Shown: positions 5,198 to 19,142 of the stretch, piece after piece
How the letters are laid out: every line of letters begins with the position of its first letter
Position numbering within the stretch: the first letter of the stretch is position 1
Source: Blastocladiella emersonii ATCC 22665
Taxonomy: Eukaryota > Fungi > Blastocladiomycota
Assembly (NCBI GenBank): GCA_025594325.1
Contig: JANHCV010000004.1
Coordinates: forward strand, 1,550,001-1,614,000
Reading direction: 5' to 3'
DNA length: 64,000 nt
The notes under the pieces: generated by a model
The model's database searches: none
Told to the model about the DNA's origin: nothing
Seen by the model: the letters and a program-made list of their open reading frames with translations, nothing else
Translations under genes and position numbers: made by a program

Positions 5198-6342
5198 ATG
5201 GAACGGTGCGTTGGGCATCGGGACAACGCGAGCTCGTGCCCAGCACCGTGCTGACGGGCGCCCGCTGCCGCGCCGCGCCGCGTAGCTACGAGAAGCAGGA
5301 GAAGCTCGGCGAGGGCACCTACGCGACCGTCTTCAAGGGCATCTCGCGCCTGACGGGCGACATTGTCGCGCTCAAGGAGATCTCGCTCGACCCCGAGGAG
5401 GTACTGGACCCCTGCGCGTTGCGGGACTGACGGAGCCCGACGCGGCGCTGACGCACCCCCCTGTGCACCGTGTAGGGCGCGCCGAGTACCGCCATCCGCG
5501 AGATCTCGCTCATGAAGGAGCTCCGCCACCCCAACATTGTGCGGCTGCACGACGTGATCCACACCGAGAACAAGCTGATGCTCGTGTTCGAGTACATGGA
5601 CCAGGACCTGAAGCGGTTCATGGACCGCCACGGCCGCCACGGCGCGCTCGAGCCCGCCCTCATCAAGTCGTTCATGTACCAGCTGATGCGCGGCATCGCC
5701 TTCTGCCACGAGAACCGCGTGCTGCACCGCGACCTCAAGCCGCAGAACCTGCTCATCAACTCGCGCGGCGAGCTCAAGCTCGCCGATTTCGGTCTCGCGC
5801 GCGCCTTTGGGATCCCCGTCAACACGTTTTCGAATGAGGTGGTCACACTGTGGTACCGCGCGCCCGACGTGCTGCTCGGGTCGCGCAACTACTCGACGTC
5901 CATCGACATGTGGTCGACCGGGTGCATCATGGCCGAGATGTTCACGGGCCGCCCGCTGTTCCCGGGCAAGACCAACGAGGACGAGCTCAACCGCATCTTC
6001 CGCATCATGGGCACGCCCAGCGAGCTGACGTGGCCGGGCATCTCGCAGTACACCGAGTACAAGTCCAACTGGCAGTACCACCCGGCCGCGCCCTTCACCA
6101 CGCTGTTCCCGATGATGGACATGTACGCCATCGACCTGCTGCAGCGCCTGCTCCAGTACCAGCCGCAGCTCCGCGTCTCGGCCAAGGACGCGCTCAACCA
6201 CGCCTACTTCTCGGACATCCACAACATCTACAGCCAGGCCCAGCAGGCACAGAACAACGCCGCCGCCGCCGCCATGGCCGCGTCACACCAGCAGCAGCAG
6301 CAACACCACGCCATGCAGGGCCAGGTTAGCCAGTTCCAGTGA
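5198..6342 (+). CDS. PHO85: Pho85/CDK5-type cyclin-dependent kinase, 329 aa, with Ala/Gln-rich tail (exons 5198-5205, 5286-5400, 5476-6342)
   Basis: [62 protein letters not shown]; two canonical introns. Confidence 0.93.
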
Positions 6343-6480: not shown

Positions 6481-7970
6481 TCACTGCATCGGGTCCTTGC
6501 CCAGGGCCTTGAGCGCGGCGTTGATCTCGCTCTTGTTCCGCTTCTTCATATCCGCGAGGATCTCCTCCCAGCACGTCTTGACGTCGCGCTTGAAGCGGGC
6601 GGCAATGTGGAACGACATGATCCGGTTCGGGTCGCCGACCGTGACTTGCTCCTGCACGCGGGCGGGCAGCCATCGTCAGTTCCCCGACTTAGAACTTGCG
6701 ATCCACGTTCGAAAGAACGTAGCACAGCAGCAGAGAAACGTACCTTGAAGCGCTTGTCGATGAACTCGAGGACCGGCTTGACGTCGTCGCTCGAACCCGT
6801 GTAGTCGGCGAAGCACTCGCACACCGTGATCGGGTCCTTGCGGATCTTGGACTCGAACAGGTCTTTTTTGTTGTGAATAATGTAGCACGGGAGCTTGGAA
6901 AACGCGGGATTGTTGATGGTCTGCTTGAAGAGCGTCAAACACTCCTTCATGCGGTTCTCGGTCGGGTCCTCGAACAGCACCGAGTTGTACCCGGCCAGGT
7001 TGCACAGGAACAGGATCCCGTTCACGTTGTCGAAGGCGTGGATCCATTTGCGACGCTCGTTGCGCTGGCCACCGACTACAAAGTGGAAGGGGTGGAGTGA
7101 GTGACCGTGGTCGCGCGGCCATGGCCACGGCCACCGTGCGGGCGGCGTTTCGCCGTACCATCCACGAGCGTCACGTTGATCGGTGGAATGGGAATGTCGG
7201 TCTGCAGGATGCCCACGGTCATGACTCGTGCCATGACAATGTCCTCCTCGGTCGGCTCAAAGTCGTCCTCGGCGAATCGCGCAATGTGCTCCATGTAGCT
7301 ACACGGCGCTCGGTGTCAGTGGCGCGCGGACCGAGGGTTGCAGAGCGCATAGGCATACAATTCGACGGCCTCGAGGATCCAGAACTCGGACCTGCGCGCG
7401 TACGTCTGCTTGATCGAGTCGTGCACCCATAGCGCCTGCGCGGCGGCGACGAGGTTCGGGTCCACCTCCTCGTCGAGCTCCTCGAGGTCGAGCGCCTCGA
7501 TCATGCTCGCCGACGACTACACACGGGAAGCGGTGAGCGGGGTGGACCGAAGCGCGAGGTGATGAGCGAGAGTGTGTACCTTGATGTCCTCGCCATCGAG
7601 CGGATAGCCGAACGTGTTGGCCTGGTTGACGAGGATGGTGATGCACTCGAGGGCGTTCTTGCGGAGCGACCGCGTAATGTCCTTGAGCTCCTGCGGCGTC
7701 AGGTTGATCTTGTGGATCAGCTTGATCAGCTTGAGCACCGTCGACTTGCCCGACTCGCCGGATCCTGGTTCGAGACGCGAGTGAGCGGTGGGACGAGTCG
7801 TGCGACGACAAACAGCGAGGCGTACCGAGCAGGAGCAGCTTGAGGTTCAGCTTCTCCTTGTGGGCCGACTCCTTGAGCTCGGCGTCAATGTTGCGCGAGC
7901 TCTCGTTGCCCGGGTTCAGGCCGCCAGTCTCGGACGGGTCGATCTTGCCCCCGCAGCACGGCAGCGGCAT
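6481..7970 (-). CDS. Heterotrimeric G-protein alpha subunit, divergent, 376 aa (exons 7970-7826, 7764-7580, 7516-7359, 7298-7159, 7075-6744, 6651-6481)
   Basis: G1 GSGESGKST, switch I RVMTVGI, G3 DVGGQR and G4 NKKD are all rebuilt in frame across 5 introns; the helical domain is present. Confidence 0.93.
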
Positions 7971-9040: not shown

Positions 9041-11761
9041 ATGGTCGCCGCCACGCTCGGCTCACCTACTGCAATGCATCCGCCGTCGCCGGCCTCGCTG
9101 CCTCCCAGGCACCCGCGCACCTGCGCTACCGCCTCTCCCGCCGCGCTCGAACCGGTGGCCCAGTCTCCCGCCGCGTCCCCGCCCATGTCGGCGACGCCAT
9201 CCCGTGGCCCAAGGACGGCCGCGAGGACGAGATCAGTCACCATCACGGCCGACCCGGCACGCGACGCTGCCCCGGCCTCGGCCACGTCGCCGCTGCCGCC
9301 GGTCCCCGAACCGCGGCGCGGCCGCACCATGACCCGGCGGTCGTTGCGCCGGCCGCGGCCCGCCGAGTCAGCCGCGCTCGGTGAAATCGAGGACGCGCTC
9401 GCTGCACGTTCCACGTGGCTCCCGCAGGACCCGGCCGCCGATGCGGCTGCGTCCCCGACCGTGGTCGCCAGCACCAGCAGCAAGTCGCCCGACACGGAGC
9501 GGGAGGCGGGCCGGCGCACCTCGGCGGCGGTCGACGAGAACGCCGTCGGGCTCTCGCTCTCGGCGTACCTCTCGTTGCGTGATGCCGGCCTGCTCGGGGT
9601 CGCAGCCGCCTCGCAGCCCAACTCGGCCCACGCGCTTCACGCCGCAGTTGCGGCGTTGCCGCCAGCCGAGCTCGCGGCGGCCGCCGCGCCTGGACTCGGA
9701 CCTGCCCGCATGGCGAGTGTGCATCGGCGCCGATCGCGTTCCCGCACCGCAACCGGCAACGACCTGCAGCCGCTCATTGTGCCTCCGCCATTGCCTCCAT
9801 TGCCGGATGGCGCAGCAGCAGCAACAGCGCCCGGTTCGGCTGCGCGAGGTGGGCCGCCGTCCCCGTCGTCGGCCGTCGACAGCGGCGTCGCAATCGTATC
9901 CCCGACGCTGCCCTCGCCATCACGGCCGCTCGATACCCCGCTGCTCAGCCCGACCCGCGACGGCCAGTTCTTTCCCGTCCCGCGCATCCGCCGCGCCAAG
10001 AGCCGCAAGGCCTCGGTCGTCCGCACCCTCACCCTCGGGACCCCGCCCGGCTGCGAAATCGAGAGCCCCATGCCCGGCGGCGACTTTGGCGGCGTGCTCC
10101 CGCTGGGCGCCTTCGCGACGGGCGACGCCATTGCCGCGGGGCTCGCGCAGCCGCCACCACCCGTCCACGTCAGCCTCCTGCGGCGGCGGCTCACCGAGCT
10201 CGACTTTGCCCTCGTGTGCCCGACCCCGAGCCCGCGCGCGTTTGCCGCGCTGCAGACGCTCGACCTGTCGCGCAACAAGCTGACCAAGCTGCCCGCGGCG
10301 CTGGCCGAGCTGACGCAGCTGCGGTCGCTCAACCTCGCGTGCAACCAGCTGACGACGGTCCCGCGCGTTGTGACGGCGTTCGAGTACCTCGAGACGCTGA
10401 TCCTGTCGCAGAACCGCATCGACTCGCCGATCCCGTCGTCGCTCGGCTACCTGACGCAGCTGCGCGTGCTCAAGCTCGACGCCAACAGCTTCTGCGGGCC
10501 CGTGCCGCTCGCCCTGGCGTCGCTCGCGCGCCTGCGCACGCTCGCGCTCGGCAGCAGCACGTACGGCGGCAACCGCATCACGGCAATCCCGCCCGGCGTC
10601 CTCGGCGCCATGCCCGAGCTCGTCGAGCTTGACCTCGCCAACAACGAGCTCATGGCGCTCCCCGACGACACGTTCACGTCGCCGCACCTCCGCACGCTCA
10701 CCGTCGAGGGCAACCGCCTCGATACATTACCCGAGACGATCGCCGACGCGCCGCACCTCGTCACGGTCCTCGCCGCCAACAACCTCTTCTGCCGCCTCCC
10801 CACCGCGCTCCCGCGCTGCCCGCGGCTCCAGGTCCTCGACCTCAGCGGCAACGCACTCTGTTTCGTGCCCATGGAGCTCATCCAGGCCGTCCACCGCCGA
10901 CGCGTCACGGTCCTGCTCACGGGCAACCCGTTCACGCGGTTTCAGGAGGAGGCGGCCGCGCTCGCTGCGGCCACGGCGGCTGTTGGGCTCGCGGGACCCG
11001 TCCAGGACGGTCCGAGCGATGATGGCGACGACGAGGCCCCGCTGACGGACCAGAGCACGAGCGCCGGCAGCGACGACGGCGCCGACGACGATCCGCTGCC
11101 CCCGCCCCCGCGCGCCTTCGAGTTCTCGCCGCGCGAGCTCGGATACCTGCACCCGGAGGCGGTCGCGTTCGACGTCCAGACCAACGCGTACCTCGGGTTC
11201 CCCGCCGACGCGCCCGCGTGCTGGTGGCCGCCCGCCGACGGGCAGACGCAGCCGTCGCAGTCGCCAACGCCGCCGTCCAGCTCGGGCAGCCCGTCCCCCG
11301 CGCGACACACGTCGCCCGACTCGGCCGGTGCGGCGCACCCGGCGCGCGTCCTGACGCTGCGCGAGCTCGCGGCGCGCAAGTACGTCGAGACGCACCTCTC
11401 CTCGCGCGACTCGTCCGGGTACCACCACCACCACCCGCAGGTCGAGGACTACGTGCCCGAGCGCCTCGCGGCGCTGCTGCGCGCGGCGCACGACCCGTGC
11501 CCGCGGTGCGCCAGCCCTGTGGTCGGCGAGTACCTGGCCACGGTCGAGCTCGAGCGCGCGCTCGGCCACACCCTGGTGCCCGTGCACAAGCGGTACTGCT
11601 CGGCGCACTGCCTCCTCCAGGCGCCCGCCGTCGCGGAGCGGCCCGCTGCGAGTAGCGGGTTGCCGCGGTCGGCGTCGGTCGCGGCGCTCGCTGGCGAGGC
11701 GGCGTCCGCGGCGCAGATTCGGCGGCAGGGGTCGGCCGCCGGGTATCACTGTCTGTGGTAA
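9041..11761 (+). CDS. Intronless 906-aa leucine-rich repeat protein with C-terminal BC-box-like and Cys4 motifs (LRRC58/LRRC28/LRRC69-like)
   Basis: About 9 typical LRRs (LxxLDLSxNxLxxLP) at ~10250-10930, with a disordered Pro/Ser N-terminus. The C-terminus has TLRELAAR, VPERLAALL, CPRC and YCSAHC. The true start may be a downstream ATG. Confidence 0.85.
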   Translation: MVAATLGSPTAMHPPSPASLPPRHPRTCATASPAALEPVAQSPAASPPMSATPSRGPRTAARTRSVTITADPARDAAPASATSPLPPVPEPRRGRTMTRRSLRRPRPAESAALGEIEDALAARSTWLPQDPAADAAASPTVVASTSSKSPDTEREAGRRTSAAVDENAVGLSLSAYLSLRDAGLLGVAAASQPNSAHALHAAVAALPPAELAAAAAPGLGPARMASVHRRRSRSRTATGNDLQPLIVPPPLPPLPDGAAAATAPGSAARGGPPSPSSAVDSGVAIVSPTLPSPSRPLDTPLLSPTRDGQFFPVPRIRRAKSRKASVVRTLTLGTPPGCEIESPMPGGDFGGVLPLGAFATGDAIAAGLAQPPPPVHVSLLRRRLTELDFALVCPTPSPRAFAALQTLDLSRNKLTKLPAALAELTQLRSLNLACNQLTTVPRVVTAFEYLETLILSQNRIDSPIPSSLGYLTQLRVLKLDANSFCGPVPLALASLARLRTLALGSSTYGGNRITAIPPGVLGAMPELVELDLANNELMALPDDTFTSPHLRTLTVEGNRLDTLPETIADAPHLVTVLAANNLFCRLPTALPRCPRLQVLDLSGNALCFVPMELIQAVHRRRVTVLLTGNPFTRFQEEAAALAAATAAVGLAGPVQDGPSDDGDDEAPLTDQSTSAGSDDGADDDPLPPPPRAFEFSPRELGYLHPEAVAFDVQTNAYLGFPADAPACWWPPADGQTQPSQSPTPPSSSGSPSPARHTSPDSAGAAHPARVLTLRELAARKYVETHLSSRDSSGYHHHHPQVEDYVPERLAALLRAAHDPCPRCASPVVGEYLATVELERALGHTLVPVHKRYCSAHCLLQAPAVAERPAASSGLPRSASVAALAGEAASAAQIRRQGSAAGYHCLW

Positions 11762-12076: not shown

Positions 12077-12695
12077 ATGACCGTGACCGAGGACGCTGTA
12101 CGTGCGGCACCATGCCCGTGCGCGCGGGCTGGATGAAGCCGGGCACCGTGCATGCGCTGACGGCCGGCCCGTGGGATCGCGCACACGTGTGTGTAGCAGG
12201 CGGCAGTGATTGCCAACCGGTTCACGACGGCGACCATGGAGGAGCGCAAGGCGGAGCTATCGCGGTTCGTGGTCATCAAGGCGGCGCGCGTGCGCGAGCT
12301 CGAGGAGGAGCTGATGGCGCGCCGGGGTACGGACTCACCCTCACTCATTGGCGATGTGGTGCGAGGTGGAGAACTCACGAATGTGACGCCCGCGCGTGTG
12401 TGTAGACGAGCTGGCGCTCCTCGAGGAGCAGCTGGCCGAGATCGAGCGCGCCGAGGCGACCGAGCAGTGGCTCACGAGCGAGGATGCCGCGAGCCTGGCG
12501 TCCCTGTTGCTGGCCGAGGCCGCCGAGGCCGCCGCCGTGTCCCCCGCGGCCGAGGACGGCGCGGCGGCCGGCGACGAGGAGGACGACGACTACGTCCCGC
12601 CCGTGTTCCCCGAGAAGGTGATCGCCGAGATCCGCGCCGAGCACCGCGCCGCGCGCGAGGCCCGCGAGGCGCACCTCCACGAGCCGCGTTCTTGA
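12077..12695 (+). CDS. Small acidic coiled-coil protein, ~145 aa, unknown function (exons 12077-12097, 12200-12326, 12406-12695)
   Basis: ATG in CATCATG context and two GTAC..GTGTAG introns give one open frame (EELMARRDELALLEEQLAEIE). The first acceptor is a tandem TAGCAG. Confidence 0.7.
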
Positions 12696-13457: not shown

Positions 13458-14368
13458 ATGACGGCCACGCTGCAGTTCCAGGGCAGCGCCGCCGCCGACA
13501 ACAACGGCACCGCTGCCGGCCGCATGGCCATCTCGATCGACACGACGGGCGACTCGTCGGCCTCGTCGTCATCGTCGTCGTCCGACTCGTCCGTCACGGC
13601 CCACCATGCCGCTGCCGCCACGACCACCACCGCCACGACCGCCGCCTCGGCCTCCGCTGCGCCCGCCGGCAAGAAGCCTGAGCCGCCGCGCAAGGCCGTC
13701 GTGGCCACGGTCGGCACGACGCAGTCGGGCAAGTCGCAGCTGCTCGCCTTCATGCACGACTACTGCGAGCAGCCGCACGACCAGGCCGACCTCGCCATCG
13801 GCGACGGCGTCAACTCGTGCACCAAGCTCGCCAAGCGCTACTCGCTCACGGTCCCGCGCCGCGAGGTCCGCCTCGTCCCCAAGGCCACGGCCCGCGGCGC
13901 CGGCCGCTTCTCGAGCCGTATCACGGCCACGGCCGCGTCGTCGTCCTCGTCGTCCGCGCACCACCATCAGCAGCAGCAGCACCAGCAGTCGTCGTCCTCG
14001 GCGAGCTACCAGACCTCGTCGTCGGCCTCGTTCGGTGGCAGCGCTGGCTCGACGGCTGGCCATGGCGGCGCCGCCGCGTACCAGGTCTCGGGCACCGCGA
14101 CTTACGGCGCTGTCGCTGGTCACGGCCACGGCCACGGCCACGGCCAGGCGGGCGGTATGGTGACGGCAACGTCGTCGTCGACCACAGTGTCGGCCACCCA
14201 CGACGGCCCGTCGTACTCGGGATCGGCGTCCGCCGTCCACCAGTCGCACTCGCAGCAGCAGCAGGCCCACCATCAGCAGCAGCAGCAGCAGCAGCAGCAG
14301 GCCCACCACCACCACCACCAATACCAGCAGCAGCTCACCCAGCAGTTGCACCACCAGGCCCAGCACGC

Positions 14369-14404
<36 letters not shown>

Positions 14405-17400
14405 CCAGTACCACCAGAACCAGCACACGCAGCAGCAGACCCACCAGAACCAGTCCAACTGGCCGTCGTACCCGCCCACCTCCTCGGCCACCTCGACCGT
14501 CCAGGGCAACACCACCTCGTACCAGGGCAACAACGCCAACACTAGCCAGCAGCAGCAGTACGGCGGCGCCGACGCCTCGTATCAGGGGAACGCGTCGTAC
14601 CAGGGCAACGCCAGCCAGCAGCAGCAGCAGTCGTACCAGGGCAACGACTCGAACACGAGCCAGCAGCAGCAGTACGGCGGCGGCAACGCCTCGTACCAGG
14701 GCAACGGCGGTAACGCCTCGTACCAGGGCAACGACGGCAACGCCTCGTACCAGGGCGGCAACGACGCCGGCGCGAGCCAGCAGCAGCAGTCGTGCCAGGG
14801 CTCCAACACGAGCCAGCAGTACCCGGGCTACGACACGAACCAGCAGTCGGCGCGCGGTCTCGGGCCCAACTCGGGCATCGTGCGCCCCGAGAGCGCCGCC
14901 GCGACCCGCTCGCTGCACGTCAACACGGCCGCCGCCGACCTGAACCGCCCCGCCTCGGCCCCGCAGCCGCACGGCGCCACGGCTGCCTCAGTCGCGGCGA
15001 CCGCCGCCGCTGCTGCTGCCTCCAAGGCCGCGGCCGCGTCCATGGCGCTCGCCGCCGAGGCGTTCGCGCTCAGCGCCGACGACGACTTTGACCTGACGCC
15101 GTCGACCGACTCGCCCGACAGCCCGCCCGCCGACACGCGCCCGGGTACCGCCACCGCCGTGTCGCGCGGGATCCCCATGTTGTCCACGTCCATGTCCATC
15201 TCCAACGACGCGTCCATGGTCATCACCGACGGCTCCAGCTCCGGCTCGGGCCACGGGTCGCCCGAGCTCACGTCGCTGCACACGTCGGCGTCCGCGAGTC
15301 CGATTCGTGGTGCCGGTGCGGCGACCAACATTGCGGCCCGCGGCGGCACCGCGTTCGTCGCCGACGGCATGCCCGACAGCTACGCGTCGTTCACGTCCGA
15401 AGACACCATGACGTCGAGCAGTGTGCGGTCGTCGTCGGCGGGCGGCGCCGACCCGTTCGCGCGCCCGTCGCCCATGATCTCGCCGCACACCCCCGCCGAC
15501 CCGCACATGAACCCGACCGTGTTCGGCACCTCGTCCACCGAGTCGGCCGCCGATGAGGGCACGCGCCGCGCCATCCGCGACGCGCTCGTCGCCGCGGGCA
15601 TCTCGACGCACGTCACGGGCAGCGGCGGCGGCGAGACCGCCACGTCGCGCGGCATGGGCGCTCCCGACTCGGGCGTAGGCGCCTCGCGCTCGCTCGGTGC
15701 GCCGGCCGCGCGTAGCGGCCCGCAGGACACCACCGTCACGTCGCAGTACGCGCCGCCCGCGCCCGGCCAGTGCGACACCACCGTCACGAGCCAGGTCCCG
15801 CCCGAGGCTGCCGTCATGGCCACGTACCCGCACAGCAGCGGCTCCGAGACGATCCAGATGCCGCAGCCGCAGCCGCCGACCATCGCCATGCCGCAGCCCC
15901 AGCCGCCCGTGGCCGTCCACCACGCGGGTGCCTGCGCCACCGCCGACTCGACCGCGGTGACGAACCAGCAGCAGCAGCAGGGCACCAACTACGACCAGCA
16001 GTACATAGCCGGCCAGGTCGCGCTCCAGAACCAGGTCGTGCAGGCGCAGGCCCAGTACCACGCCCAATACCAGCAGCAGCAACAGCAGCAGCAGCTCGCC
16101 CAGATCCAGCAGCTCGCCCAGATGTCGCAGCAGCAGAACCAGCAGATCCAGCAGTCGCAGCAGCACCAGCAGGTCCAGCAGCACCAGCACACGACGACGA
16201 CGACCACCCACCATACCCAGCAGACCCACAACGTGCAGGTCCACCACCACCACCACTCGCACAGCACCTCGTCGTCGTCGTCCTCGTCGCAGCACCACCA
16301 GCAATCCCAGTGCCAGCAGGTCCAGCTCACGTCCGAGCAGCAGCAGGTCCAGCAGTACTACCAGCAGCTCGCGGCCCAGAACCTGCACCAGGCGGCCGAG
16401 AAGCACCAGTGCCAGGACCACTTCTACGACAAGTACCACGGCCACATGCAGCTCCAGGCCCACGCCGAGCAGCAGCTGCAGCTCCACGCCGCCATCGCCA
16501 ACAAGCACCAGTGCGAGGAGCACTTTGCCCTCGAGTTCACCAAGTTCGAGGACGAGAAGAACGCCGCCGCCGCCGCGGCCGCCGCGACGACGACGACGAC
16601 CACCACCACCACCAAGACGGGCCGCCGCCAGCGCCTCAAGAACCGCTTCAAGAACACGGCCGGCCACCTGTTCGGCAAGGTGTTCAACCACTCGGACTCG
16701 GACTCGGACTCGTCGTCATCCGACAGCGACTCGGACTCGGACACGGAGCACGCCGCCAACCTCACGGTCCAGTACAACAGCGGCAACGAGCAGAACGCGG
16801 CGTCGTTCAGTCTCGGCGGCTCATTCGCGTTTGGCGCCGCCGCCGCCGGCGCGGCTACGGCTGCTGCCGCGACCTCGAACACGACCTCGGGCCAGTCGAC
16901 GGCGATCCACGGCGACGTCCAGGTGTTCCAGGGCACCGACTACCAGTCGCACCAGCAGGCGATCCAGCAGCAGCAGCAGTCGGAGGCCGACCTCGCGCAG
17001 CACCTGCTCGGCGCCCAGATCGCCCACGAGTCGCAGATCATGGCGTCGCAGCAGGTCGGCAACGACACCAACCAGCAGCAGCAGAACCAGACCCAGTCGG
17101 GCTTCGGTATGCAGGTCCAGTACGGCGACGCCAAGCAGCAGCAGCAGGCCGGGTTCGGCGCGCAGGTGCAGTTCGGCCAGACCGAGCAGACGCAGCAGAC
17201 GCAGCACACTCAGCAGACTCAGCAGCAGCAGCACCAGGGCACCGCCGTCGGCGTCCACGTCCAGGGCCAGAACAACCCTTCTGGCGTCCAGGTCAACCAC
17301 ACGCACCAGAACCAGGCGCACCATGCTCAGCACCAGCAGCAGCATCACCATCACTCGCAGACCCACCACCATTACCACCACACTCAGCAGCAGCAGCAGC

Positions 17401-19142
17401 AGCACCATCACCTGCAGAGCGCGACGGGCGGGTTCGTCGCGCCGATCCACCCGAACCACAGCCTGTTCCTCGCGAGCGACGTGGACGGCTGCTCGCTGAC
17501 GACGCTGCTCAGCCGCCTCGAGGAGCAGTTCAGCATCACGACCACGACGACGTCGGCCAACTTCACCGAGACGGTCGTCATGAACGAGGAGCAGCGCATC
17601 GAGTACCTCGAGGAGGTCGAGGACCTGTTGCACGACCGCACGCTCGAGCTCAAGGTGACGCGCCCCGCGCTCGGCACCCCGCCGCGCATGTACCTCGACA
17701 TGATCGACACGCCCGGCCTGCTCGACAGCGACTCGTTCCGCGACCCGTTCGTCGACCTCGACCACCTCACGTCGATCCTCACCCAGGTCAAGCGCGCGGG
17801 CCACGTCACGGCCATCGTCTACGTCATCAAGTACGTTTTCTACTCGCTTGCTCGCGTGTGCGAATTACGAAAACTGACCCCGTCCGCGTACCCCCGCGTA
17901 GCGTCGATCGCCCGTACGACTCGAGCGCGCTCATGGCCCTGTCGACGTACCTGACCAACCTGCGCGAGCTGTGCACCAACCTGATCGTCGTGCACTCGTC
18001 GTACAACGTGCACAAGGCGCTCGAGGTGGCCAAGTCGTGCAAGGAGCAGTCCGGGTTCTGCCTGTTTGACCTCGGCGCGCGCGTCCGCGAGTTCAACGCG
18101 CGGCTCGGCGAGCTCGGGTTCCCCGACGTGCGCCCGCTCCACGTCGCCATGGACAACCTCGTGCAGCCCACGGCGCGCGCTGGGCTCAAGGCCATCTGCT
18201 ACGAGGGCGCGCACGTCCTGCTCGACATTGTCGAGGAGCTCGCCAAGGCGCCCGTCGTGCCCATTGAGCGCGTCAACTTTGTCAAGCTGCGCATGATCCG
18301 CGACGTCGACGTGGTACGCTGACTCGGGGCGCCGCACTCGATTTCCGTTAACGATGCTGACCTCAACTGTTTGTTCGCTCGCGTAGCACGTTTCGGTGCA
18401 GCTCACCAACTCGATCGACATGCTGCGCACCGAGCTGTACTCGCTCGGCAACAGCGACCGCGAGTCGCAGCTCGTCACGGCGGCCGAGGCGCTCGCCGAG
18501 ACCCGCGCCGAGCACCGGCGCGTGCTGTCGGAGCTCGCGCGCCTCGACACGGACGACGAGGTCGAGGTGGACCTGCGCAAGTGCCGGCGCATCCCGCAGG
18601 CGTCGGTGCGCGAGGGCCGGTCCGTGATGCTGGTCGTGATCGCGTACGAGTCGACGGAGGTCCCGCTGCGCGCGGCACGCCTCGTGCAGCCGCACTGGCC
18701 GCGCGGCATCGTGCGCCACGAGCACCTCGACACCAAGCGGTATATTGCCGTCCTCGCCACGCTCCCGCAGTGGCCGTGCTGCGCGCACGTGCAGCTGTTC
18801 ACGCACCGCCGCGACGTGCACGCGGCCGAGATCCGCCGACTCCAGGTGCAGCGCGGCACGCTCGAGGGCCAGCTCACGGAGCGCCAGGAGGAGCTCGCCA
18901 AGTGGACGCGCGCCCTCGGCGAGGAGAAGCGCCGCGTCGCCGAGCTCGAGGCCCGACTCACTATCCTCAAGCGCGCCGTGGCCACGGTCGACGCCGACCG
19001 CGTCCCGCTCGACCTGTTCGTCGACGTCCACGACTTGTACCGCGACCTCGCCCAGGACATCCACCTGCGTCGCAAGGTCGACGTCGCCAAGGTCCGCGCC
19101 CTCGCGCATCTCGTCGAGCGCTACTACTACCGCCGCTGCTGA
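13458..19142 (+). CDS. Giant (1846 aa) P-loop TRAFAC-type GTPase with ~1200-aa Q/H/S/N-rich insert inside the G-domain and C-terminal coiled coil (exons 13458-17830, 17902-18313, 18387-19142)
   Basis: G1 VGTTQSGKS (aa 86-93), G2 IGDGVNSCT (T122), G3 MIDTPG (D1417), then the VTAIVYVIN strand and LIVVHS in the G4 position. The 4.3-kb first exon is uninterrupted. A probable 5'UTR intron lies at 13366-13451. Confidence 0.85.
14248..14402 (+). repeat. Coding CAG/CAC trinucleotide tracts (polyQ/polyH); further tracts at ~16070-16340 and ~17190-17410
   Basis: Runs of (CAG)n and (CAC)n are read directly from the sequence, in frame with the giant GTPase. Confidence 0.95.
14500..14840 (+). repeat. Imperfect coding tandem repeat SYQG(N), 7 copies plus one SCQG, with NTSQQQQYGG spacers
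   Basis: The nucleotide unit TCGTACCAGGGCAAC recurs; translation reads SYQGNNANTSQQQQYGGADASYQGNASYQGNASQQQQQSYQGN... Confidence 0.9.

What the first reader, a model, noticed from the sequence alone, without database searches (positions are those of the whole stretch)
13458..19142. GTPase whose G-domain is split by a ~1200-residue prion-like insert
Seen: G1 (GTTQSGKS, aa 86-93) and the G2 Thr (SCT, aa 122) lie ~1295 residues from G3 (DTPG, aa 1417). The gap is one uninterrupted in-frame stretch of polyQ/polyH/polyS/polyT and Q/N/G/Y repeats with no splice signal that would remove it. Established: G2 and G3 in TRAFAC GTPases are normally a few tens of residues apart, and G2 sits in switch I. 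Inference: the flanks (YSLTVPRREVRLV and EYLEEVEDLLHDRTLELK..MIDTPG) resemble an uncharacterised fungal AIG1/septin-like G-domain family I recall from Mortierellaceae. The insert would then occupy that family's variable G2-G3 loop and couple nucleotide state to condensation or amyloid assembly.
Basis: partly seen in the sequence, partly recalled or inferred. Interest (0 to 1): 0.82.

Follow-up and report, generated by a model that had tools for sequence, protein, structure and literature searches.

The report
GTPase domain split by giant disordered insert
A fungal (blastocladiomycete) gene encodes an AIG1/Toc-like GTPase whose nucleotide-binding domain is interrupted at one loop by about 1,200 residues of mostly low-complexity sequence. 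The split is real and shared by related species, but nothing yet shows that the insert does anything prion-like.

Summary
One three-exon gene (13458-19142, + strand, 1,846 aa) has G1 GTTQSGKS at aa 86-93, the G2 Thr at aa 122 and G3 DTPG at aa 1417. A single open, exon-like stretch (GC3 0.89-0.98 throughout) lies between them.

A profile built only from 64 unsplit relatives matches the window protein in two pieces. They abut at one profile position: aa 72-143 and aa 1377-1815.

The closest annotated relative (Allomyces, 356 aa between G1 and G3) models as one G domain. Its best structural match is Toc33, at Z 16.8 across both halves.

The insert site is the excursion between strands β2 and β3. 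G1-G3 spacing is about 95 aa in Pezizomycotina and 211-356 aa in Allomyces and Blastocladiella paralogues. It is 830 aa in Blastocladiella britannica, roughly 960 aa in Catenaria and 1,331 aa here.

Three or four short islands inside the insert are conserved and mostly colinear across genera. The rest is lineage-specific Q/H/S/T/A/G-rich repeat.

The family is AIG1/Toc/septin-like and blastocladiomycete, not Mortierellaceae. No RNA run was listed, so translation is inferred. Coupling to condensation or amyloid is untested speculation.

Other first-reader notes in this scan, unchecked, report other domains in the same genome split by low-complexity inserts.

The parts
13458..17830 (+). Exon 1 (aa 1-1457 plus two bases of codon 1458): N-terminal low-complexity leader, first G-domain half, insert, start of second G-domain half
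   Evidence: First ATG of the open frame. The frame and splice junction are confirmed by colinear alignment to Allomyces P0001.
13671..13886 (+). First half of the G domain (aa 72-143): strand β1, P-loop, helix α1, switch I Thr, strands β2 and β2'
   Evidence: Matches positions 16-85 of a profile of 64 unsplit relatives, i-E 3.8e-13. It is 60% identical to B. britannica and 65% to Catenaria. The equivalent piece of P0001 has pLDDT 83-97.
13713..13736 (+). G1 / Walker A motif GTTQSGKS
   Evidence: The pattern G-x-x-Q-x-G-K-S/T is conserved through the family.
13821..13823 (+). Putative G2 threonine (Thr122, in GDGVNSCTK)
   Evidence: The Cys-Thr pair is invariant in the 10-sequence family alignment (C61, T62 of P0027).
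13887..17435 (+). Insert proper (aa 144-1326): Q/H/S/T/A/G-rich, predicted disordered, in frame
   Evidence: No stop, and GC3 0.89-0.98. No Pfam family. Low in order-promoting residues and Q/N-rich. The profile of unsplit relatives skips it at a single position.
14252..14438 (+). CAG-type trinucleotide tract (polyQ/polyH)
   Evidence: Tandem Repeats Finder: period 3, 62 copies.
14515..14790 (+). Tandem repeats of 27 and 114 nt encoding (G)NASYQGN units, a Tyr/Gln/Gly/Ser/Asn-rich segment
   Evidence: Tandem Repeats Finder: 27-nt unit, 2.9 copies, 94% matches; 114-nt unit, 2.4 copies. This points to recent local duplication.
14922..14957 (+). Conserved island NTAAADLNRPAS (aa 489-500)
   Evidence: Matches STAAADTHRPAG of B. 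britannica, score 40. 1 of 40 local shuffles reaches it.
15261..15308 (+). Conserved island PELTSLHTSASASPIR (aa 602-617)
   Evidence: Matches SIHTSVSASPMV (B. britannica) and PEITSLNTSASH (Catenaria), scores 40 and 43. 1 of 40 shuffles reaches either. Colinear in all three.
15438..15473 (+). Conserved island AGGADPFARPSP (aa 661-672)
   Evidence: Matches GGSADAFAHPSP (B. britannica), score 43, reached by 0 of 40 shuffles. The B. britannica to Catenaria match of the same island (EFARPSPPLPAT) scores 38, reached by 3 of 40. The window to Catenaria match alone (score 30) is not above shuffles.
16398..16526 (+). Two copies of KHQC(Q/E)(D/E)HF (aa 981-992 and 1012-1023)
   Evidence: Both match ARHQCQEHF of Catenaria, scores 46 and 45, each reached by 1 of 40 shuffles. 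BLASTP E 0.049.
17436..17830 (+). Start of the second G-domain half in exon 1 (aa 1327-1457): clade-specific helix, EYLEEVEDLL helix, extra strand, strand β3, G3, helix α2, strand β4
   Evidence: 48-54% identical to B. britannica and Catenaria from aa 1327/1346. Profile match from aa 1377.
17706..17717 (+). G3 motif DTPG
   Evidence: Nearly invariant in the family.
17831..17901 (+). Intron 1 (71 nt, phase 2, GTACGT..CTGAC..TAG)
   Evidence: Removing it restores VYVIN-VDRPYD, colinear with P0001. An intron lies at the same place in B. britannica and Catenaria.
17902..18313 (+). Exon 2: remainder of the G domain
   Evidence: 66% identical to P0001. Part of the profile match aa 1377-1815.
17987..18004 (+). 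VVHSSY on strand β5, in the place of the G4 motif NKxD
   Evidence: The His is nearly invariant in the family (H532 of P0001, H189 of P0027). In both models this strand directly follows helix α3.
18314..18386 (+). Intron 2 (73 nt, phase 0, GTACGC..CTGAC..TAG)
   Evidence: The frames of B. britannica and Catenaria break at the same place.
18387..19142 (+). Exon 3: helical hairpin with a β-rich domain at its tip, then the stop codon
   Evidence: Aligns to P0001 and to Catenaria P0005. The models show long paired helices flanking a β-domain.

Best explanation
This is one gene for an approximately 1,846-residue TRAFAC-type P-loop GTPase, or a close NTPase variant. It belongs to an uncharacterised family nearest to the AIG1/GIMAP-Toc-septin group, followed by a helical hairpin that carries a β-rich tip domain.

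The G domain is interrupted at one point, inside the extra mini-subdomain that this family carries between strands β2 and β3. That is the far end of the hairpin joining switch I to switch II. The interruption is about 1,180 residues of intrinsically disordered sequence. The two ends of such a hairpin excursion lie side by side, so the domain can fold around the insert, which is extruded as a loop.

The insert is old in this blastocladiomycete lineage. It consists of a few short conserved linear motifs, several of them Ser/Thr-Pro-rich. These are most likely docking or phosphorylation sites. They are separated by lineage-specific low-complexity spacers that grow and shrink by replication slippage and local duplication.

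Shown: the gene structure, the split, its conservation, the single-fold prediction for a relative, and the conserved islands.

Inferred: that the insert is translated; that the protein works by nucleotide-dependent dimerisation or oligomerisation, like its nearest structural relatives; and that the islands are interaction sites while the bulk is a largely neutral spacer.
For: - Gene model and splice sites are confirmed by colinearity with P0001.
- A profile of 64 unsplit relatives hits aa 72-143 (positions 16-85, 3.8e-13) and aa 1377-1815 (positions 85-503, 4.6e-36), abutting at position 85.
- Family members reach Pfam thresholds: P0015 scores Dynamin_N 35.1 (cut-off 27) and MMR_HSR1 31.9 (cut-off 21.9); P0027 and P0029 score MMR_HSR1 27.0 and 28.5.
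- In the AF2 model of P0001 both halves have pLDDT about 83-97 and most of the insert is below 50.
- VIA-align gives Toc33 2j3e_A at Z 16.8, with 212 residues aligned over model range 89-652. All 50 top matches are GTP-binding proteins.
- The compact member P0027 (pLDDT 87.9) has the same β2-β2'-helix-strand-β3 topology. Its best matches are Toc33 (Z 16.5) and GIMAP7 (Z 15.9), then IAN10 and GIMD1. The nearest Atlas clusters are all AIG1/MMR_HSR1.
- The insert has exon-like GC3 in frame and no stops, and no intron-like candidate.
- B. britannica has one ORF (L002 4206-7100) holding both halves, 830 residues apart. In Catenaria the halves lie 2.7 kb apart on one strand.
- The tree puts the window with these two (95/93), sister to the Allomyces trio (97/99).
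- Conserved islands exceed 37-40 of 40 local shuffles.
- Recent tandem repeats lie inside the insert.
Against: - No RNA run was listed, so there is no direct evidence that the insert is in the mRNA or the protein.
- The window protein itself gives no Pfam hit.
- The one-fold result comes from a relative with a 270-residue insert, not from the window protein, which could not be submitted. It is spliced, and exon 1 alone exceeds the size limit.
- The G4 motif NKxD is absent (VVHSSY), so guanine specificity is unproven.
- The Catenaria locus changes frame three times, which could mean decay there.
- The Allomyces orthologues lack the conserved islands and have only about 270 residues, so most of the insert is dispensable in at least one lineage.
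- The island statistics are from 40 shuffles only, and one match is not colinear (window aa 783 with B. britannica insert position 82).
Confidence: 0.72

Rival explanations
1. The architecture is as above, but the insert has no function of its own. It is neutral low-complexity bloat that a permissive surface loop tolerates, in a lineage whose genomes are generally prone to such expansions.
For: - The insert shares no detectable similarity with those of Allomyces P0001 or the paralogues P0002 and P0004.
- Length ranges from about 270 to 1,184 residues among orthologues.
- Fresh CAG and 27/114-nt tandem repeats are present.
- A. macrogynus is reported as an outlier, with 510 proteins whose complex low-complexity regions overlap domains (PMC11878562).
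- Unchecked scan notes list PAS, cytochrome b5 and RGS domains split by such inserts in this genome.
Against: - Three to four short islands are conserved, mostly in the same order, between the window, B. britannica and Catenaria, above nearly all local shuffles.
- No other large ORF in this 64-kb window has comparable low-complexity content.
Confidence: 0.3
2. The insert is a prion-like or phase-separating module, and its self-assembly is switched by the nucleotide state of the G domain through the β2-β3 (interswitch) hairpin.
For: - Four regions meet the Q/N-rich criterion, with up to 45 Q/N in 80 residues.
- aa 380-470 carry repeated SYQGN units with regularly spaced Tyr in a Q/G/S/N context. 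From my own knowledge, not tested here, this resembles FUS-type low-complexity domains.
- The insert enters at the hairpin that links switch I and switch II.
Against: - The evidence is compositional only.
- The Q/N- and Tyr-rich tracts are not conserved in sequence or position among orthologues, and the Allomyces orthologues have a much shorter insert.
- The insertion point is the end of the hairpin far from the nucleotide. No register-shift mechanism is known for AIG1/Toc-type GTPases (general knowledge).
- Low-complexity inserts appear common in this lineage.
Confidence: 0.1
3. The gene model is an artefact. The insert is not part of the mature product, either because of an unusually long or non-canonical intron or because there are two transcripts. 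Alternatively, the locus is a decaying pseudogene.
For: - No RNA data could be obtained.
- Public annotations of the orthologous loci are fragmentary. P0003 starts in exon 2 and P0005 in exon 3, and antisense ORFs are called over the inserts.
- The Catenaria locus has frame breaks.
- Long ORFs are easy to get at 68% GC.
Against: - There are zero stops in 1,218 codons, against 3-25 in the other frames.
- GC3 is 0.94, as in exons, whereas introns here have GC 0.58 and are about 70 nt long.
- There is no intron-like candidate.
- B. britannica has the same uninterrupted arrangement. Single annotated genes span both halves in three Allomyces species and two Blastocladiella proteins.
- Both halves are well conserved, and neither is a complete domain alone.
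- The islands are conserved in the reading frame.
Confidence: 0.07
4. The fold is that of a G domain, but the protein is not a GTPase. It binds another nucleotide or is a catalytically dead scaffold, because the guanine-specificity motif is missing.
For: - VVHSSY replaces NKxD, and there is no Asp at the specificity position.
- Pfam matches to GTPase families are weak or absent for the blastocladiomycete members.
Against: - The replacement (V-H-S) is conserved family-wide rather than decayed.
- G1, the G2 Thr and G3 are intact.
- The nearest structural relative, Toc33/34, also has a His-containing non-canonical G4 and still binds GTP (recalled, not tested here).
Confidence: 0.15

Closest known systems
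AIG1/GIMAP/IAN GTPases and chloroplast Toc33/34/159 (the septin-related branch of TRAFAC GTPases)
   Same: - Same G-domain fold: Toc33 Z 16.5-16.8, GIMAP7 Z 15.9 with 255 residues aligned including C-terminal helices, GIMAP4 Z 13.9-14.7. IAN10 and GIMD1 are among the best AlphaFold/Swiss-Prot matches.
- The G3 context is DTPGL-x-D.
- A His lies on strand β5 in place of NKxD.
- Helical or coiled-coil extensions follow the G domain.
- Toc159 also combines such a G domain with a very long disordered acidic region (recalled).
   Different: - No member reaches the Pfam AIG1 threshold. The best is P0015 at 26.0 against 27, and the window protein has no hit.
- An extra β2'-helix-strand element lies between β2 and β3 even in compact members, giving G1-G3 of about 95 residues.
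- The disordered region is inserted inside the G domain rather than appended.
- A β-rich tip domain sits in the helical hairpin.
Uncharacterised 'G domain-containing protein' family of Pezizomycotina (for example Metarhizium MGU_11313, about 520-550 aa)
   Same: True homologues. The profile search links them to the window protein (P0027 E 4.3e-4 in the library search; 3.9e-44 for the reverse profile against the single window protein, Z = 1). Motifs and C-terminal architecture are the same.
   Different: They are unsplit, with G1-G3 of 94-99 residues. No function is published for them as far as the searches showed.
Heterotrimeric G-protein alpha subunits (helical domain inserted in the Ras-like domain)
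   Same: A G domain that folds around a large insertion placed between its nucleotide-binding motifs (textbook knowledge).
   Different: The Gα insert is a folded helical domain of about 120 residues, placed before switch I (between G1 and G2), and it caps the nucleotide. Here the insert is about 1,180 disordered residues after G2, at the far end of the β2-β3 hairpin.
Low-complexity inserts within conserved domains in repeat-rich proteomes (Plasmodium, Dictyostelium; Allomyces in PMC11878562)
   Same: In-frame, fast-evolving, compositionally biased insertions in surface loops of otherwise conserved domains. Lengths differ between close relatives (general knowledge).
   Different: - The size is very large. 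From memory only, I recall no G domain with an insertion of more than 1,000 residues between G2 and G3.
- Short islands conserved across genera lie inside it.
Dynamin-like proteins (bacterial DLPs, IniA, mitofusin/Fzo1)
   Same: Weak sequence and fold matches: Dynamin_N at 35.1 bits in P0015; C. jejuni DLP2, IniA and Fzo1 among the Foldseek hits. Both have a G domain followed by long paired helices.
   Different: TM-scores are low (0.2-0.3) over the whole chain. No dynamin signature or middle/GED arrangement was shown. Only one distant family member passes the Pfam threshold.

Membership tests
TRAFAC-class P-loop GTPase fold | Walker A / G1 motif GxxxxGK[ST] | tested here: met
   GTTQSGKS at aa 86-93. 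Conserved in homologues.
TRAFAC-class P-loop GTPase fold | Conserved Thr in switch I (G2) | tested here: met
   Thr122 in NSCTK. The Cys-Thr pair is invariant in alignment A5. Its role in Mg2+ contact is inferred.
TRAFAC-class P-loop GTPase fold | G3 motif DxxG at the end of strand β3 | tested here: met
   DTPG at aa 1417-1420. It follows strand 452-460 in the P0001 model.
TRAFAC-class P-loop GTPase fold | G4 motif [NT]KxD conferring guanine specificity | tested here: not met
   VVHSSY at the equivalent strand, with no Lys or Asp. His is conserved family-wide.
TRAFAC-class P-loop GTPase fold | One α/β G-domain fold formed by both halves | tested here: met
   Met by proxy. The AF2 model of P0001 superposes on Toc33 (212 residues, Z 16.8, model range 89-652), Era, Arl2 and others. 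The window protein itself aligns colinearly to an unsplit profile. The window protein was not folded.
AIG1/GIMAP family (Pfam PF04548) | Score above the Pfam gathering threshold | tested here: not met
   The window pieces give no hit. The best family member, P0015, scores 26.0 against a cut-off of 27.
AIG1/GIMAP family (Pfam PF04548) | Conserved hydrophobic box between G3 and G4 (recalled from the GIMAP literature) | not tested
   No residue-level comparison with GIMAP sequences was made.
AIG1/GIMAP family (Pfam PF04548) | G domain plus C-terminal amphipathic helices packing on it, as in GIMAP2/7 | tested here: inconclusive
   GIMAP7 aligns over 255 residues (model 21-499), but at rmsd 12.7. 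IAN10 aligns over 22-419 with TM about 0.3.
Dynamin family (Pfam PF00350 Dynamin_N) | Score above the Pfam gathering threshold | tested here: inconclusive
   Met only by distant members: P0015 at 35.1 and P0020 at 27.0, against a cut-off of 27. P0004 scores 22.3 and the window has no hit.
MMR_HSR1 (Pfam PF01926, generic G domain) | Score above the Pfam gathering threshold | tested here: inconclusive
   P0015 31.9, P0029 28.5 and P0027 27.0 exceed 21.9. P0001 scores 14.2 and the window pieces give no hit.
Prion-like / Q/N-rich domain | At least 30 Q+N in an 80-residue window (a census criterion recalled from the literature) | tested here: met
   Four regions, with window starts at aa 233-389, 800-896, 1151-1229 and 1232-1247. 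The maximum is 45.
Prion-like / Q/N-rich domain | Self-propagating aggregation or amyloid formation | not testable with these tools
   This needs biochemical or in vivo assays.

The most novel reading that the evidence does not exclude
The insert is a regulated assembly module. GTP-dependent rearrangement of the β2-β3 hairpin, or G-domain dimerisation that brings two inserts together, switches a Gln/His/Tyr-rich disordered region between dispersed and condensed (or amyloid-like) states. The abundant His residues (86 in the insert) might add pH or metal sensitivity, and the conserved Ser/Thr-Pro islands might act as phospho-switches. That would be a GTPase whose effector output is a phase transition of a loop built into its own G domain.
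Probability: 0.08. Interest if true: 0.85.

Novelty: new variant of a known kind. Interest (0 to 1): 0.45.

Why it matters
- It gives a natural and extreme example of how much sequence a G domain can carry inside the hairpin that links its two switch regions and still be kept by selection. The graded series of relatives (about 95, 211-356, 830, roughly 960 and 1,331 residues between G1 and G3) makes this usable for protein engineering and for studying how disordered regions grow.
- It defines a small, unstudied eukaryotic GTPase family near AIG1/Toc/septins. Only 29 representatives were found in 1.8 billion clusters.
- Gene callers break at such loci. The orthologues in Blastocladiella britannica and Catenaria are annotated as fragments overlapped by antisense ORFs.
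- If the condensate reading were true it would be a new kind of GTPase output, but nothing here supports it beyond composition.

Tried and rejected
- Pfam on the window's own pieces and on whole exon 1 gave only sub-threshold chance hits or none. The family assignment had to come through homologues.
- No RNA-seq run was listed. The second look-up gave only DNA contigs of one sample, so transcription could not be tested.
- BLASTP of the insert against the inserts of P0001, P0002, P0004 and P0008 found nothing. The only hit was a 27-residue helix shared by the two Blastocladiella paralogues.
- A global MAFFT alignment of the three long inserts aligned only Ala and Gln runs. Ungapped 12-mer scoring with local shuffles replaced it.
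- Foldseek on the 1,001-residue P0001 model gave only weak E-values, about 1e-3, because of the disordered bulk. VIA-align with trimming was used instead.
- The only intron-like pattern in exon 1 (14880-15121) was rejected: GC 0.78, 242 nt, and it shifts the frame.
- The Mortierellaceae origin was rejected, since no hit comes from that group.
- GC3 cannot tell sense from the matching antisense frame, because antisense ORFs also show high GC3. Strand assignment therefore rests on continuity with the conserved halves and the absence of stops.
- The window protein could not be folded. It is spliced, exon 1 exceeds 1,200 residues, and I did not type long sequences.
- The Catenaria sequence used for alignment and the tree was stitched with X at the frame breaks. 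Its split-codon residue was assumed to match the window's.
- The tree used 20 rows. Fragments and most Pezizomycotina sequences were left out.

Full report
**Observation**

Translating 13458-19142 in frame 1 gives an open frame of 1,498 codons, followed by out-of-frame sequence. The DNA shows two short introns with fungal signals: 17831-17901 (GTACGT...CTGAC...TAG, phase 2) and 18314-18386 (GTACGC...CTGAC...TAG, phase 0). Removing them gives a 1,846-residue protein. Its junctions (VYVIN-VDRPYD and RDVDV-HVSVQL) are colinear with an Allomyces homologue.

Between them, frame 0 has no stop, while the other five frames have 3-25. Third-position GC is 0.89-0.98 in every 300-nt bin, in phase with the conserved flanks. 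The two introns have GC 0.58 and no periodicity. A search of exon 1 for donor, branch and acceptor patterns found one candidate, with GC 0.78 and the wrong phase.

Contigs from three DNA runs of one sample carry the stretch unchanged, apart from repeat tracts that the tool skipped. That sample may be the assembly's own source, so this is not independent support. No RNA run was listed.

**What the flanks are**

The window's own pieces hit no Pfam family. A word-based search with the tail of exon 1 found one protein, Allomyces javanicus GGF32_001496 (P0001, 1,001 aa). It has the same split: the P-loop at residue 104 and DTPG at 460.

An exhaustive profile search with the C-terminal half found only 29 representatives among 1.84 billion. 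They come from Blastocladiomycota, chytrids, Pezizomycotina and an amoebozoan transcriptome. A second search added about 70 Pezizomycotina proteins of roughly 530 aa, which UniProt labels 'G domain-containing protein'.

Some members pass Pfam thresholds for generic or dynamin-type G domains, and one nearly passes for AIG1: P0015 scores Dynamin_N 35.1, MMR_HSR1 31.9 and AIG1 26.0 against a cut-off of 27. A profile search of solved-structure sequences gives only weak septin, Der and mitofusin matches.

**One domain or two**

I built a profile from 64 unsplit members only and ran it against the window protein. It matches in two pieces that meet at a single profile position. Positions 16-85 align to aa 72-143 (3.8e-13), and positions 85-503 align to aa 1377-1815 (4.6e-36).

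The AlphaFold2 model of P0001 gives high confidence to both halves and low confidence to most of the insert. With the low-confidence parts trimmed, it superposes as one body on whole G domains. The best match is Toc33 at Z 16.8, with 212 residues aligned over model range 89-652. All 50 top matches are GTP-binding proteins.

The compact member P0027 models well (pLDDT 87.9). It shows that the family has an extra β2'-helix-strand element between β2 and β3 even without any insert. Its nearest structures are Toc33, GIMAP7, GIMAP4, IAN10 and GIMD1. The nearest Atlas clusters are all AIG1/MMR_HSR1. The insert therefore enters the excursion at the far end of the hairpin that links switch I to switch II.

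The NKxD motif is replaced by V-V-H-S, conserved family-wide. Nucleotide specificity is therefore open.

**The insert across relatives**

G1-G3 spacing varies widely:

| Group | G1-G3 spacing (residues) |
|---|---|
| Compact members | 91-99 |
| Allomyces paralogues | 120-173 |
| Blastocladiella P0004 / P0002 | 211 / 271 |
| Allomyces trio (P0001 measured; P0099 and P0100 are in its >90% cluster) | 356 |
| This window | 1,331 |

The public models P0003 (B. britannica) and P0005 (Catenaria) are C-terminal fragments, so I fetched their contigs. In B. britannica one ORF (L002 4206-7100) holds the P-loop half, about 745 low-complexity residues and the DTPG half, giving a G1-G3 spacing of 830. In Catenaria the halves lie 2.7 kb apart on one strand, but the frame changes three times. 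Both loci share the window's two intron positions. The Allomyces gene lacks these introns and has a different one inside the P-loop codons.

A tree places the window with B. britannica and Catenaria (95/93). That group is sister to the Allomyces trio (97/99), and the P0002/P0004 paralogues lie outside (100/99). The upstream neighbour is shared with the A. javanicus locus.

**Content of the insert**

Most of the insert is Q/H/S/T/A/G-rich and poor in order-promoting residues. Four regions are Q/N-rich. It contains CAG tracts and 27/114-nt tandem repeats that encode SYQGN units.

It has no detectable similarity to the inserts of P0001, P0002 or P0004. Against B. britannica and Catenaria, however, several 12-residue islands score above 37-40 of 40 local shuffles and are mostly colinear. 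They are NTAAADLNRPAS, PELTSLHTSASASPIR, AGGADPFARPSP and two copies of KHQC(Q/E)(D/E)HF. The insert is therefore old in this lineage, carries a few constrained motifs, and is padded by lineage-specific repeats.

**Context**

No other large ORF in the window has comparable low-complexity content. A survey of fungal low-complexity regions singles out Allomyces macrogynus as an outlier, with 510 proteins whose complex low-complexity regions overlap domains (PMC11878562). Unchecked notes of this scan list other domains split by such inserts in this genome.

**Verdict**

The split is real and conserved, and it is compatible with a single G-domain fold. The family assignment as AIG1/septin-like is reasonable at the level of fold and nearest relatives.

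The most likely reading is a disordered loop that bears short motifs and has been inflated by slippage, inside an oligomerising GTPase. The condensation or amyloid coupling remains a low-probability idea resting on composition alone.

Noticed in passing
window 17831-17901 and 18314-18386; L002 about 7058-7126; L003 about 9255-9275; L001 10331-10426: The window's two introns sit at the same positions in Blastocladiella britannica and Catenaria. They are absent from the Allomyces javanicus orthologue, which instead has a 96-nt intron inside the P-loop codons (between aa 110 and 111). This points to intron turnover within one orthologous group.
   Followed up: partly
L003 about 6197-6200, about 7300 and about 8850: The Catenaria anguillulae orthologous locus changes reading frame three times, once inside the conserved P-loop half with no room for an intron. 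These are either assembly indels or a decaying copy.
   Followed up: partly
L002 4245-4772(-), 4913-5371(-), 6516-7130(-), 7165-8566(+); L003 5909-7188(-), 7381-8859(+), 10001-10558(+): Public annotations at the orthologous loci cut the gene into fragments and call antisense ORFs across the GC-rich insert. The G domain itself is partly unannotated in Catenaria.
   Followed up: partly
window 16398-16526 (aa 981-1023): A duplicated Cys/His-containing motif, KHQC(Q/E)(D/E)HF, is also present once in Catenaria. It might be a small metal-binding or structured element inside the insert.
   Followed up: partly
window 17100-17177: A pair GFGMQVQYG / GFGAQVQFG lies in the insert. An earlier scan note calls it RHIM-like. 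I saw no counterpart in the B. britannica or Catenaria inserts among the top-scoring islands.
   Followed up: no
window 12200-12328 and L001 7832-7960: The upstream neighbour gene is shared between the window and the A. javanicus locus (67% identity over 43 residues by tblastx). The downstream neighbours gave no match.
   Followed up: partly
window 13569-16691, minus strand: Long antisense ORFs (467 and 567 aa) overlap the insert. They share third-codon positions with the sense frame and look like by-products of the extreme GC3, not genes.
   Followed up: partly
P0021 (Thecamoeba quadrilineata transcriptome), P0012 and P0014 (chytrids): The GTPase family reaches beyond Blastocladiomycota and Pezizomycotina, to chytrids and an amoebozoan. 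The amoebozoan member is a transcript, which is expression evidence for a compact member.
   Followed up: no
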